Shown here one piece after another: positions 28,773-31,577 of a DNA stretch of 64,000 bases. Each line of letters opens with the position of its first letter. Within the stretch, counting starts at the first letter, position 1. This DNA comes from Octopus bimaculoides (Eukaryota), in NCBI RefSeq assembly GCF_001194135.2, contig NC_068989.1, positions 74,641,930 to 74,705,929 of the forward strand, read 5' to 3'. The position numbers and the translations under genes are program-made. The notes beneath the pieces were generated by a model. The model saw nothing but the letters and a program-made list of their open reading frames with translations, was not told the origin of the DNA and ran no database searches.

Positions 28773-30737
28773 ATGTTCCAGTACTCCAAGAATCTACTAA
28801 TCATTTTTCTGATAGCTCTTGGCGACGAAGTTATTCAACAGTCAAGTTGTTTTACAAACAATCCCGAATGTAATCCAACAATGTGTATCAGTTGTTCGTG
28901 TAACAATTATTGTTACCTGTATAATGAATGTTGCTCACATTCGGTAAATCAAACTATTATAAACCAAAGAACATTGTCAACAGATTACAGTTGCAGGAAA
29001 ATTGATGCTAACAGTTATTTCATGTTTGACCGCTGTCCAAGCGACCATTCATTTACAGAACACATTACCTACTGTGAAGCACCAGATGAGAATGATCAAT
29101 TATACAACATACCTGCTTTTGGAAAACAAACTAAAAGACTTTACAGGAATTTGTTCTGTGCTCTGTGTAACGGAGAGGAATACATATTATGGACAGTTCA
29201 CTACAAATGTAATCAGGTGATGGATATAGATTTCTCTCTCTTCCCTGACAGACAGATACAGAATCACTGTCAAGTATTGTTTGAAGCGCCATCAGACTAT
29301 ACAGATTACAAATACCAATGTATTCATTACGTTGCAAAATGTCCTCCAAACGTTACCAATACTTCTTTAGTTTCTTCGTGTATGTTTGGGCCAATGGCTA
29401 TTGTGGAATCAAATGGAACTACTTTTAGGAACACTCACTGCGCCATCTGCAACGGTATTCATATTAACGATATTCTCTGTAATGCATCTATCTATGGAAA
29501 TATTTCATATGGAACGCCCAGACAACAATATCCTCTAACAATAATATTTAACTATAATAATAATAATTTTGAAGTTTCAAATAATGGGCAACATAAACTT
29601 TATTCGAAAAAGCTACCCTCTTGTTCACAAGGATTTATTTACGATGAAAAAATGAAACAATGTCGGCAAGTTTACTATAATTCTATATTAAATTGTACAG
29701 CTAAAAGACTGGAAAAATCTGAATATTACATCACCAGTGATGGGTATCTTTATCTAAATGCTTCCCACATTCTGCTCAACCAATCAGCATTCATTCAAGA
29801 TCCACAAGGCATAAGTATTTGTGTAAATAACAGAACAGAGGTGATGGGAAAATATTATACTTTTGCAAGCTATATCACATTAGTAGGATTAGTGACTTCT
29901 ATTCCTGCTCTATTCATCACTATCATAGTTTATTTTTGTATACCTGATCTCCTTACATTACCAGGTAAACTTCTCATTAGTCTTTTAGTATCATTGTTTA
30001 CAGCAGAACTCCTGCTACTTATCTCACCACAAGTTACATCAAGTTCCTTGTGTTCAACAATAGCTATTATGATGCATTATTTTTTCCTGGCGGCTTTCTT
30101 CTGGATGAATGTCATGTCATTTGATGCCTGGTACACTTTTTCAGGATTTACACCGCTTCGAAGTACAGAAAAAGATACAAAGAGACTTGTCTACTATTCT
30201 TTATATGCTTGGATATGTCCCCTTATAATTGTGACAGTGTCACTCATATTTCAATATGCACCCGGGAACCATGGACTTTCTCCAGAATATGGAAAAGGAT
30301 TTTTTTGTTGGATTACAAATATAAAATCTCGATTGTGGCTCTTTGCAGCGCCCGTAATAATAATTTTGTTACTTAATATATGTTCTTTCATACTCACTGC
30401 CAGAGGTCTCTATTTAGCAAGTAAAAACTCCTCTAAATATCTGGAAGTAAAGAATAAGACGAAATTTAAGGTTTATTTTAAGCTAAGCCTTTTAATGGGC
30501 TTAACATGGATATTTAGCTTCTTTCCAAAATTGAATGAAATCGGTGTAGTTTTTCTTATATCCTGTATTTTAAATTCCTTTACTGGGTTAATAATTAGCA
30601 TATTCTTTTTGTCAACGAAAATTGTAAGACGTCATTTTCGTCTTAAATGCTACCAAAGATATTACAAAAAGGAATGCAAACATACTGACATATCTATCAG
30701 TTCTAACAAAACGCAGTTGACTAATGTACATATATAG
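28773..30737 (+). CDS. Family-B (7TM_2; Methuselah-like/adhesion-like) GPCR with SMB-like Cys-rich ectodomain, paralog 1; single coding exon, 654 aa
   Basis: Uninterrupted ATG-to-TAG ORF. Hydrophobic N-terminus (LLIIFLIALG). SMB-like CSCNNYCYLYNECCS. Two [YF]RNxxCAxCN motifs. Seven hydrophobic segments with family-B-like motifs (LPGKLL; HYFFLAAFFWMNVMSFD; YAWICP; CWI; LMGLTW; LNSFTG). A pyrimidine-rich CAG acceptor lies 119 nt upstream (28651-28653). Confidence 0.9.
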   Translation: MFQYSKNLLIIFLIALGDEVIQQSSCFTNNPECNPTMCISCSCNNYCYLYNECCSHSVNQTIINQRTLSTDYSCRKIDANSYFMFDRCPSDHSFTEHITYCEAPDENDQLYNIPAFGKQTKRLYRNLFCALCNGEEYILWTVHYKCNQVMDIDFSLFPDRQIQNHCQVLFEAPSDYTDYKYQCIHYVAKCPPNVTNTSLVSSCMFGPMAIVESNGTTFRNTHCAICNGIHINDILCNASIYGNISYGTPRQQYPLTIIFNYNNNNFEVSNNGQHKLYSKKLPSCSQGFIYDEKMKQCRQVYYNSILNCTAKRLEKSEYYITSDGYLYLNASHILLNQSAFIQDPQGISICVNNRTEVMGKYYTFASYITLVGLVTSIPALFITIIVYFCIPDLLTLPGKLLISLLVSLFTAELLLLISPQVTSSSLCSTIAIMMHYFFLAAFFWMNVMSFDAWYTFSGFTPLRSTEKDTKRLVYYSLYAWICPLIIVTVSLIFQYAPGNHGLSPEYGKGFFCWITNIKSRLWLFAAPVIIILLLNICSFILTARGLYLASKNSSKYLEVKNKTKFKVYFKLSLLMGLTWIFSFFPKLNEIGVVFLISCILNSFTGLIISIFFLSTKIVRRHFRLKCYQRYYKKECKHTDISISSNKTQLTNVHI

Positions 30738-30918
30738 TGTTATTTATAAACGTATCCTAAACAACTTTACGGGTTTAAATTAATATTCAGTCTATGGTAA
30801 AATCTAGTCCACAAATCGCTTACCGTCGTAATCATGTAAATGCATTGCTTGAAAGCTAAATGCAAAGCAGGTACACCTGTATTCAAACAGTTGATCACAT
30901 TCATATTTACACACATGC

Positions 30919-30953
<35 letters not shown>

Positions 30954-30969
30954 ACACACACATACACAC

Positions 30970-31015
<46 letters not shown>

Positions 31016-31577
31016 ACACGGATGGGCCCAACCTATCAAGTTTACCTGTCATTAAATATGGACAAGCTAGAAAGCAATGCGCTAACATCCATTATTCCCG
31101 CACTTTTTCCAAATACCTATATCACATTCTGGTGCTGAGCTTTCCTTGTGAAGAGGCAATTAATATATGCAATATATCCAACAATAAGGGGTGAACACAT
31201 AAATTTCGAAATAGTATATCCTGACGACACATCAAATCTCTTTATCTCTCTTTTTCTGTCTCGTTCCTTCTCGCTCTGTTATTCCCTCCTTCTCTTTATC
31301 TCTCCCCCATCTCACTCTGCTCCATTTTCAGTTCAAATCACAGAGAAGGTGATCTTCAAAATCAATGTTTAGCAGAAAACTGCCTGCAAGGGTTTATTTC
31401 TGCACTACAAATCCCCAGTACTTCCCAGGTCTAATATTGATTACATATGATAAAACTGGCAAAACTAAAACTTCCAATGCATGGTAACATTCAACGTCTC
31501 CCCAACATCTTTTACTAGAGAGCGTCTAGATAATATTGGTTTAGAACAAGGCTAGCAATTTTCAGGGGAGAAATATT

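What the first reader, a model, noticed from the sequence alone, without database searches (positions are those of the whole stretch)
29129..29215. 87-bp perfectly identical tract between the two intact receptors
Seen: 29129-29215 equals 52390-52476 base for base, including all synonymous positions (encoding about TKRLYRNLFCALCNGEEYILWTVHYKCN). The preceding about 78 nt differ at about 13 positions and the downstream ectodomain is more divergent still. Inference: recent ectopic gene conversion homogenising one ectodomain module while neighbouring loops diverge.
Basis: partly seen in the sequence, partly recalled or inferred. Interest (0 to 1): 0.7.

Follow-up and report, generated by a model that had tools for sequence, protein, structure and literature searches.

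The report
Gene-conversion footprint in octopus receptor paralogs
Two neighbouring Methuselah-like receptor genes of Octopus bimaculoides share an exact 87-base stretch, best explained by one copy overwriting the other (gene conversion) at the family's most conserved motif; this is ordinary in tandem gene families, and here it cannot be shown to be recent.

Summary
Window 29129-29215 equals 52390-52476 exactly, and the 87-bp match cannot be extended. The two genes (A and B) are otherwise 76% identical, with dS 0.53. They are intronless class-B (7tm_2) Methuselah-like GPCRs in a tandem cluster on an Octopus bimaculoides chromosome.

The tract encodes the family's most conserved Cys-rich ectodomain motif. 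Protein constraint therefore explains the missing non-synonymous changes. The case for conversion rests on about 16 synonymous sites: 0 differences against 6.2 expected (P about 4e-4 locally, 0.003 by permutation). Other family pairs accumulate synonymous changes at these codons at the normal rate, so a family-wide nucleotide constraint is unlikely.

A pseudogene copy (C) carries the tract with one mismatch. It lies inside a roughly 250-bp block that is 98% identical to B, against about 72% elsewhere. That shows conversion operates in this cluster.

"Recent" is not supported. The O. vulgaris ortholog of A has all 87 bases and O. sinensis has 86 of 87. The zero-difference bound (pS below 0.17) is older than the species split (pS 0.14). 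Direction and date remain open, because no B ortholog could be retrieved.

Verdict: an ordinary interlocus gene-conversion footprint at a constrained motif.

The parts
29129..29215 (+). 87-bp tract in gene A (codons 120-147, TKRLYRNLFCALCNGEEYILWTVHYKCN)
   Evidence: Exact, maximal match to 52390-52476. Identical to both O. vulgaris A copies, and 86/87 to O. sinensis.
52390..52476 (+). 87-bp tract in gene B
9859..9945 (+). Tract copy in pseudogene C, with 1 mismatch at 9895 (CTG to CTT, synonymous Leu)
   Evidence: The first 35 tract bases (plus the G just before the tract) are also present before the gap, at 9812-9847.
28773..30737 (+). Gene A: intact single-exon 654-aa Methuselah-like class-B GPCR (Cys-rich DUF8401 ectodomain plus 7tm_2)
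   Evidence: ORF. Pfam 7tm_2, E = 3e-28. DUF8401 comes from the precomputed hits. AF2 model and Foldseek matches to class-B 7TM structures.
51995..53959 (+). Gene B: intact single-exon 654-aa paralog, 62.5% aa and 76% nt identical to A, dS 0.53
9583..11649 (+). Pseudogene C: 5'-truncated, with frameshifts, in-frame stops and a SINE insertion
   Evidence: tblastn pieces fall in alternating frames. Stops appear in the translations, and the insert has a target-site duplication.
52256..52512 (+). B side of the B-C near-identity block (5 mismatches over the 245 sites compared; about 28% divergence outside the block)
   Evidence: Mismatch list. Binomial P about 1e-27.
9679..9981 (+). C side of the B-C near-identity block. 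It includes the 10-N gap at 9848-9857 and the 36-nt overlap duplicated on either side of it.
9583..9680 (+). 'Native', diverged copy in C of the segment just 5' of the tract (about 80% to A 29044-29138). It is retained upstream of the B-like block, so C carries a partial tandem duplication, as expected if C was the recipient.
   Evidence: blastn; junction sequence.
29067..29128 (+). 5' flank in which O. bimaculoides A differs from B at 9 sites, whereas the O. vulgaris A ortholog differs from B at only 3

Best explanation
The 87-bp identity is the footprint of interlocus (ectopic, non-allelic) gene conversion between tandem, same-strand Methuselah-like GPCR paralogs A and B, whose starts lie 23 kb apart on an Octopus bimaculoides chromosome. 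A short heteroduplex or synthesis tract copied one paralog's sequence into the other. It lies at the family's most conserved ectodomain motif (K-x-LYRNL[FY]CALC[NH]GE-x-[FY]ILW, which holds two invariant cysteines). That motif is where two 76%-identical genes offer the longest stretches of matching sequence for strand invasion. Purifying selection on the protein then blocks non-synonymous change, leaving only about 16 synonymous sites free to diverge.

Shown here: the identity, its significance at synonymous sites, the lack of synonymous constraint on these codons elsewhere in the family, and an independent and much larger exchange between B and pseudogene C over the same spot.

Inferred: that A and B exchanged sequence, as opposed to never having diverged there.

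Not determined: the direction and the date. The event may be as old as, or older than, the O. bimaculoides / O. vulgaris split. It most simply precedes the B-to-C exchange, because C carries the same tract and the B-C block has since diverged by 2%.
For: 1. Synonymous sites. In the tract's 28 full codons there are 0 synonymous differences at 15.7 sites, where 6.2 are expected from the rest of the gene (pS 0.40). P = 3.6e-4. A gene-wide permutation of the longest run of identical codons gives P = 0.003.

2. GENECONV-style test. Over 1066 sites polymorphic in a six-gene family alignment, A and B agree at 34 consecutive sites spanning 29131-29215. None of 5000 permutations reached this.

3. Control for constraint. 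At the homologous codons, other family pairs show synonymous differences at or above their gene-wide rate: P0006 vs L4a 3.0 observed against 2.5 expected; P0006 vs P0007 8.5 against 7.8; A vs P0006 12.0 against 9.7 (codons shown). Single synonymous changes also occur in the tract in O. sinensis A (AAC to AAT) and in pseudogene C (CTG to CTT).

4. Conversion demonstrably operates here. B and pseudogene C are about 72-74% identical overall but differ at only 5 of 245 sites in a block that contains the tract (P about 1e-27). Constraint cannot explain this in a pseudogene. C also keeps its own diverged copy of the 5' segment next to the B-like block.

5. Comparison with the ortholog. O. vulgaris A differs from O. 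bimaculoides B at 3 of 149 sites across 29067-29215, while the two A orthologs differ at 6 there. The paralog-to-ortholog ratio is far below the gene-wide 461:142 (Fisher P = 0.008). A and B therefore share more recent ancestry in this block than elsewhere.

6. Geometry fits. The copies are tandem and on the same strand, and the tract length is typical of conversion tracts. Another pair in the family (P0006 and its neighbour) also shows a significant identity run, 79 sites with 0 of 5000 permutations reaching it.

7. No support for an embedded RNA element. RNA-folding z-scores are -0.36 and +0.22, and there is no Rfam match.
Against: The evidence specific to A versus B rests on only about 16 synonymous sites.

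The tract is equally invariant in the O. vulgaris A ortholog (87/87) and nearly so in O. sinensis (86/87). There is therefore no species-specific (concerted) signature inside the tract, and a constraint limited to the A/B/C clade cannot be excluded.

If a single event predates the species split, three lineages then stayed unchanged at synonymous sites, which has a probability of only about 0.03 (my arithmetic).

The flank pattern is not explained by one simple event. In 29064-29237, all 9 sites that can be polarised show B matching O. vulgaris A and not O. bimaculoides A. Polarising with distant paralogs as outgroup gives mixed answers.

No B ortholog could be retrieved, and B's tract has no confirmation from a second assembly. 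The assembly is short-read based and breaks inside this very tract in copy C.
Confidence: 0.75

Rival explanations
1. No conversion took place. The tract has simply not changed since the A/B duplication. Strong purifying selection on the core Cys-rich motif removes amino-acid changes, and the roughly 16 synonymous sites stayed identical by chance or through weak clade-specific synonymous constraint such as codon preference or an exonic regulatory signal.
For: The motif is the most conserved part of the ectodomain family-wide and the best-predicted part of the ectodomain model. The orthologs in O. vulgaris and O. sinensis are also invariant or nearly so. The paralog-to-ortholog comparison within the 87 bp is uninformative, 0 against 0.
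Against: Synonymous P = 3.6e-4 locally and 0.003 gene-wide. The homologous codons in other family pairs show normal or above-normal synonymous divergence. Synonymous changes are seen in O. sinensis A and in pseudogene C. The 149-bp block around the tract shows a shallower paralog than ortholog relationship (Fisher P = 0.008).
Confidence: 0.12
2. Assembly artefact. The short-read assembler collapsed or gap-filled the tract of one paralog with reads from the other, for example by popping a bubble, so the true copies are similar but not identical.
For: The assembly has many N gaps. In copy C a contig break falls inside the tract, with a 36-nt unclosed overlap. This shows that the assembler saw the tract as a repeat.
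Against: Both the A and B tracts lie inside gap-free stretches of 8.8 kb and 3.8 kb. The A tract is confirmed base for base by an independent assembly of another species. Copy C, assembled separately and B-like in its flanks, has the same tract apart from one private SNP, which shows that the assembler can separate copies differing by a single base. At worst an artefact could hide one or two differences, and the island of similarity would remain.
Confidence: 0.05
3. A functional nucleic-acid element overlaps the coding sequence and holds the 87 nt fixed in the A/B/C clade. One candidate is one arm of a long-range dsRNA used for coleoid A-to-I editing. Another is an exonic enhancer or splicing-type signal.
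For: The tract is invariant in A, in B and in O. vulgaris A. From general knowledge, coleoid cephalopods are reported to show reduced sequence change around RNA-editing sites.
Against: There is no excess local RNA structure (z = -0.36 and +0.22) and no Rfam match. The genes are intronless. Homologous codons in sister subfamilies are not constrained. Pseudogene C keeps the tract only as part of a larger B-derived block.
Confidence: 0.05

Closest known systems
Region-restricted interlocus gene conversion in tandem receptor or adhesion gene clusters. From general knowledge, not tested here: vertebrate clustered protocadherins, where conversion homogenises particular coding segments while other ectodomains diversify; olfactory-receptor clusters; red/green opsins.
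   Same: Tandem, same-orientation paralogs. A short tract of identity that includes synonymous sites, set in otherwise diverged coding sequence. The tract coincides with a conserved segment while neighbouring ectodomain parts diverge. A pseudogene takes part in exchange.
   Different: Only one short tract (87 bp) is seen between the two intact genes. There is no species-specific concerted pattern inside it, because the ortholog in another species has the same sequence. Direction and age are unknown.
Suspected gene conversion in cephalopod tandem clusters: reflectin and tyrosinase genes of Argonauta argo (PMC9635652)
   Same: An octopod genome with tandem duplicates in which parts of the gene bodies are kept highly similar.
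   Different: Those cases involve shared sequence of more than 1 kb and multi-exon genes, and were inferred from dot plots. Here the tract is short, lies in intronless GPCR genes and was tested at synonymous sites.
Octopus-specific Methuselah-like GPCR expansion ('group 4' of Ritschard et al. 2019, PMC6408891)
   Same: Same gene family: class-B 7TM, tandemly co-localised and under overall purifying selection. That paper reports omega 0.31; here omega is 0.43 for A vs B and 0.22-0.56 for the other pairs.
   Different: That study did not analyse gene conversion within the family. It names it only in a general list of rearrangement mechanisms.

Membership tests
Interlocus (ectopic) gene conversion tract | A segment whose identity between paralogs is significantly higher than in the flanks, including at synonymous or otherwise unconstrained sites | tested here: met
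   0 synonymous differences at 15.7 sites against 6.2 expected, P = 3.6e-4. Permutation P = 0.003. Polymorphic-site run test, 0 of 5000 permutations.
Interlocus (ectopic) gene conversion tract | The identity is not explained by constraint on the nucleotide sequence itself | tested here: met
   Homologous codons in four other family pairs diverge synonymously at or above their gene-wide rate. No RNA structure and no Rfam match. A constraint specific to the A/B/C clade is not excluded.
Interlocus (ectopic) gene conversion tract | Phylogenetic incongruence: within the tract, paralogs of one species group together against their orthologs | tested here: inconclusive
   In the tract, A of O. bimaculoides, B of O. 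bimaculoides and A of O. vulgaris are identical, so no tree can be resolved. In the wider 149-bp block the paralog-to-ortholog ratio is abnormally low (Fisher P = 0.008). The B ortholog is missing.
Interlocus (ectopic) gene conversion tract | Donor and recipient are physically linked, similar in sequence and in the same orientation; tract length runs from tens to hundreds of bp | tested here: met
   C, A and B are all on the + strand with gene starts about 19 and 23 kb apart. The tract is 87 bp.
Interlocus (ectopic) gene conversion tract | Independent evidence that conversion occurs at the locus | tested here: met
   The block shared by B and pseudogene C has 5 differences at 245 sites against about 28% outside, P about 1e-27.
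Interlocus (ectopic) gene conversion tract | The tract is confirmed in reads, so it is not an assembly collapse | not testable with these tools
   No read data are available. Indirect support comes from the O. vulgaris and O. sinensis assemblies for gene A only.
   The O. vulgaris A tract is 87/87 identical. The 95% bound from 0 differences at 15.7 sites is pS below 0.17, against pS 0.134-0.139 between the species.
Methuselah-like class-B GPCR (octopus 'group 4' expansion) | Secretin/adhesion-type seven-transmembrane domain | tested here: met
   Pfam 7tm_2, E = 3e-28 and 5e-28. Foldseek top hits are adhesion and secretin GPCR 7TM structures, E about 1e-8.
Methuselah-like class-B GPCR (octopus 'group 4' expansion) | The family-typical Cys-rich ectodomain (DUF8401, PF28443) and homologs named Mth-like | tested here: met
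   Precomputed Pfam hits and source names for A, B and their homologs. Invariant cysteines in the alignment.
Methuselah-like class-B GPCR (octopus 'group 4' expansion) | The Drosophila Methuselah N-terminal ectodomain fold | tested here: not met
   hmmscan against Pfam found no Methuselah N-terminal domain. The Foldseek matches cover only the 7TM part. 'Mth-like' therefore applies to the 7TM domain, not to the ectodomain.

The most novel reading that the evidence does not exclude
The 87 nt are held invariant by a nucleotide-level function specific to this sub-cluster and are not merely the residue of a past exchange. One possibility is one arm of an RNA duplex used for coleoid A-to-I editing. 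A milder version is that the motif is a recurrent conversion hotspot. Repeated re-homogenisation would then keep one structural module of the ectodomain identical across C, A and B over times longer than the species split, while the rest of the ectodomain diversifies.
Probability: 0.1. Interest if true: 0.55.

Novelty: new member of a known kind. Interest (0 to 1): 0.25.

Why it matters
The finding shows that paralogs of the octopus-specific Methuselah-like receptor expansion do not evolve fully independently. Short exchanges, including exchanges that involve a pseudogene, occur at the conserved Cys-rich core of the ectodomain.

This matters in practice for anyone building trees, dating duplications or running dN/dS tests on this family. 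Mosaic genes violate the single-tree assumption behind those analyses.

It does not reveal a new mechanism.

Tried and rejected
1. RNA element. Folding 231 nt around the tract in A and in B gave z = -0.36 and +0.22, and Rfam gave nothing relevant. Rejected as far as local structure goes.

2. B ortholog. The O. vulgaris locus (L001) and the O. sinensis locus (L002) are collinear with the window. L002 ends at about window 39.1 kb. In L001 collinearity is lost after about window 45.5 kb, and the locus ends before the position where B would lie. No B-like protein is among the 46 homologs found. Look-ups of two further paralogs landed about 500 kb away. The ortholog test for B therefore failed.

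3. Second O. vulgaris A copy as a possible overwritten B. Rejected: it belongs to a 15-kb tandem duplication that is 99.2-99.5% identical, flanks included.

4. Polarising the flank differences with distant paralogs. The answers were mixed (about 3-4 sites each way), because synonymous sites are saturated at dS about 1.6. This gave no direction.

5. Exact-run test on the four-sequence alignment (A, B, C, O. vulgaris A). It has little power in the tract, because almost no site there is polymorphic among those four. The six-gene family alignment was used instead.

6. Structure. The AF2 model has moderate confidence (mean pLDDT 68), and Foldseek matched only the 7TM domain, so no known fold could be assigned to the ectodomain.

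7. Other large ORFs in the window. None has a Pfam domain.

Full report
**What is there.** The window is AT-rich, repeat-rich, gap-rich animal DNA. Protein searches place it on a 96.9-Mb chromosome of Octopus bimaculoides, at roughly CM046609.1:74.64-74.71 Mb. It holds three same-strand copies of an intronless gene.
- Gene A (28773-30737) encodes an intact 654-aa protein.
- Gene B (51995-53959) also encodes an intact 654-aa protein.
- Copy C (about 9583-11649) lacks its 5' end and carries frameshifts, in-frame stops and a SINE insertion with a 16-bp target-site duplication.

A and B have a Cys-rich ectodomain (DUF8401 in the precomputed Pfam hits) followed by a secretin/adhesion-type 7TM domain (Pfam 7tm_2, E about 1e-28). 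Foldseek matches only class-B 7TM structures. Public sources name the homologs 'Mth-like'. The family corresponds to the octopus-specific, tandemly arranged Methuselah-like expansion ('group 4') of Ritschard et al. 2019, which is reported to be under purifying selection (PMC6408891). More members lie 66-115 kb downstream on the same chromosome.

**The observation.** Positions 29129-29215 and 52390-52476 are identical at all 87 bases, and the match cannot be extended. The 78 nt before the tract differ at 15 sites and the 78 nt after it at 19. A and B are 76.4% identical overall, and the next longest exact run is 40 nt. A third copy of the tract, with one mismatch, sits in pseudogene C at 9859-9945.

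**How much needs explaining.** The tract encodes the most conserved motif of the ectodomain. K-x-LYRNL[FY]CALC[NH]GE-x-[FY]ILW recurs in paralogs that are only about 50% identical. N126, C129 and C132 are invariant across 21 family members, down to 26% identity. In an AlphaFold model it is the best-predicted part of the ectodomain: pLDDT about 77-84, with a short helix at 127-132 and a hairpin at 137-146. Purifying selection alone therefore accounts for the absence of amino-acid differences.

What remains is about 15.7 synonymous sites with no difference, where 6.2 are expected from the rest of the gene (pS 0.40). That gives P = 3.6e-4. A gene-wide permutation of the longest run of identical codons among conserved residues gives P = 0.003. 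In a GENECONV-style test over 1066 sites polymorphic in a six-gene family alignment, A and B agree at 34 consecutive sites (29131-29215), and none of 5000 permutations reached this.

**Constraint or shared history.** The decisive control is how the same codons behave elsewhere in the family (codons).

| Pair | Synonymous differences observed | Expected from gene-wide rate |
|---|---|---|
| P0006 vs its neighbour L4a | 3.0 | 2.5 |
| P0006 vs P0007 | 8.5 | 7.8 |
| P0007 vs L4a | 9.5 | 7.8 |
| A vs P0006 | 12.0 | 9.7 |
| A vs B | 0 | 6.2 |

Synonymous sites of this motif are thus free to vary in the family. Single synonymous changes also occur within the tract in O. sinensis A and in pseudogene C. 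Local RNA folding shows no excess structure and Rfam has nothing.

Conversion also demonstrably operates in this cluster. B and pseudogene C are about 72-74% identical overall, yet differ at only 5 of 245 sites in a block that contains the tract (B 52256-52512, C 9679-9981; P about 1e-27). Constraint cannot explain that in a pseudogene. C additionally keeps its own diverged copy of the 5' segment (9583-9680) immediately upstream of the B-like block, which suggests that C was the recipient. I therefore take gene conversion as the best explanation of the A-B tract (confidence 0.75).

**Why 'recent' is not supported.** The syntenic O. vulgaris locus has two copies of the A ortholog, inside a 15-kb tandem duplication that is 99.2-99.5% identical, and both carry the identical 87 bases. 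The O. sinensis ortholog has 86 of 87.

The A orthologs are 92.4% identical, with dS 0.147, against dS 0.53 for A vs B. Their identity in the tract is not remarkable in itself (P = 0.10; run test P = 0.44). It does show that the tract sequence already existed in the common ancestor.

Zero differences at 15.7 sites bounds pS only below about 0.17, which is beyond the between-species value of 0.134-0.139. The event could therefore be an A-to-B conversion in the O. bimaculoides lineage or an exchange before the split. A pre-split event requires three lineages to have stayed unchanged, with probability about 0.03 (my arithmetic). C has the same tract inside a block that has since diverged 2% from B. 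The A-B homogenisation therefore most simply precedes the B-C exchange.

**An unresolved complication.** Where the two A orthologs differ within 29064-29237, B agrees with O. vulgaris A at all 9 polarisable sites and never with O. bimaculoides A. O. vulgaris A differs from O. bimaculoides B at only 3 of 149 sites across 29067-29215. The A orthologs differ at 6 sites there, a paralog-to-ortholog ratio far below the gene-wide 461:142 (Fisher P = 0.008).

Two readings fit. In the first, the ancestral homogenised block was about 150 bp, and O. bimaculoides A later changed unusually fast in its 5' part. In the second, a separate B-to-A exchange occurred in the O. vulgaris / O. sinensis lineage. Polarising with outgroups is uninformative because synonymous sites are saturated. 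A B ortholog would settle this, but I could not retrieve one. Either way the motif region looks like a repeated site of exchange in this sub-cluster.

**Artefact.** The assembly is full of gaps, and in C a contig break lies inside the tract. The same 36 nt flank a 10-N gap on both sides, and the upstream contig stops just before C's private SNP. This shows that the assembler saw the tract as a repeat.

Against an artefact, A and B run through the tract in gap-free sequence. A's tract is confirmed by another species' assembly. C, which is B-like in its flanks, independently shows the same tract. I give an artefact about 5%. At worst it would hide one or two differences.

**Verdict.** It is best read as an ordinary interlocus gene-conversion footprint at a strongly constrained motif in a tandem GPCR family. 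It cannot be dated as recent, and its direction is unknown. It counts as a new example of a known kind, since similar exchanges have been proposed for other cephalopod tandem clusters (PMC9635652). Its main relevance is to phylogenetic and selection analyses of this octopus-specific receptor expansion.

Noticed in passing
window 9583-11649: The third copy (C) is a pseudogene. Its first ~53 codons are replaced by a CA/TA microsatellite (9520-9582). It has at least three frameshifts and several in-frame stops.
   Followed up: yes
window 10042-10297: A SINE-like insertion at 10058-10281 interrupts C's ectodomain and is flanked by a 16-bp target-site duplication (ATATCCATATACAGAT). The same element family occurs at L001:33816-34044 (O. 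vulgaris) and L002:18624-18852 (O. sinensis), about 87% identical.
   Followed up: partly
window 9583-9981: C has a partial tandem duplication. Its own diverged copy of the pre-tract segment (9583-9680) is followed, from 9679, by a block 98% identical to B (5 mismatches in 245 bp). This looks like a B-to-C conversion or templated repair that was resolved with a duplication. The junction lies 10 nt into the tract.
   Followed up: partly
window 9812-9893: The 10-N gap at 9848-9857 has the same 36 nt on both sides (9812-9847 equals 9858-9893), so it is an unclosed contig overlap. The true sequence probably has neither the gap nor the duplication. The upstream contig ends just before C's only private SNP in the tract (9895).
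   Followed up: partly
L001:1-29985 (O. vulgaris OX597822.1): A 15-kb tandem duplication, 99.2-99.5% identical, carries two A orthologs that match at all 1961 aligned bases (one single-base indel). The annotated protein P0002 fuses two ectodomains and has no 7TM domain, so it is probably a gene-model error. The duplication is either very recent or a haplotype artefact.
   Followed up: partly
L002:9555-11514 (O. sinensis CM016868.1): The A ortholog needs two frameshifts to be read through, and the annotated protein (P0005) starts just after the tract. This is either a real pseudogene or indel errors in a long-read assembly.
   Followed up: no
window 30086-30161 vs 53341-53416: This is a second low-divergence stretch between A and B: 76 bp with 3 differences, including a 40-bp exact run. 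It lies in a conserved transmembrane motif (LAAFFWMNVMSFD.WYTFSGFTPLR), and synonymous divergence dips to pS 0.11-0.2. It could be an older conversion tract or simply constraint. It is only weakly significant (P = 0.02 in the four-sequence run test).
   Followed up: partly
L004:344-2329 vs L004:10001-12055: Two neighbouring family members (dS 0.2) agree at 79 consecutive family-polymorphic sites in the 7TM region, and none of 5000 permutations reached this. Conversion-like mosaicism is therefore not confined to the window's sub-cluster.
   Followed up: partly
window 29148-29174 and 29430-29456 (gene A residues 126-134 and 220-228): The ectodomain contains the motif N-x2-C-A-x-C-N-G twice (RNLFCALCNG and RNTHCAICNG). 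The cysteines are invariant family-wide, which suggests that DUF8401 is built from two related Cys-rich modules. The two copies differ at synonymous sites.
   Followed up: no
window 30896-31020: Just downstream of gene A lies a low-complexity repeat that matches dozens of other places in the window at 75-100% identity (for example 1888-2087, 3596-3690, 48235-48337 and 49571-49684). It is probably a dispersed microsatellite-like element.
   Followed up: no
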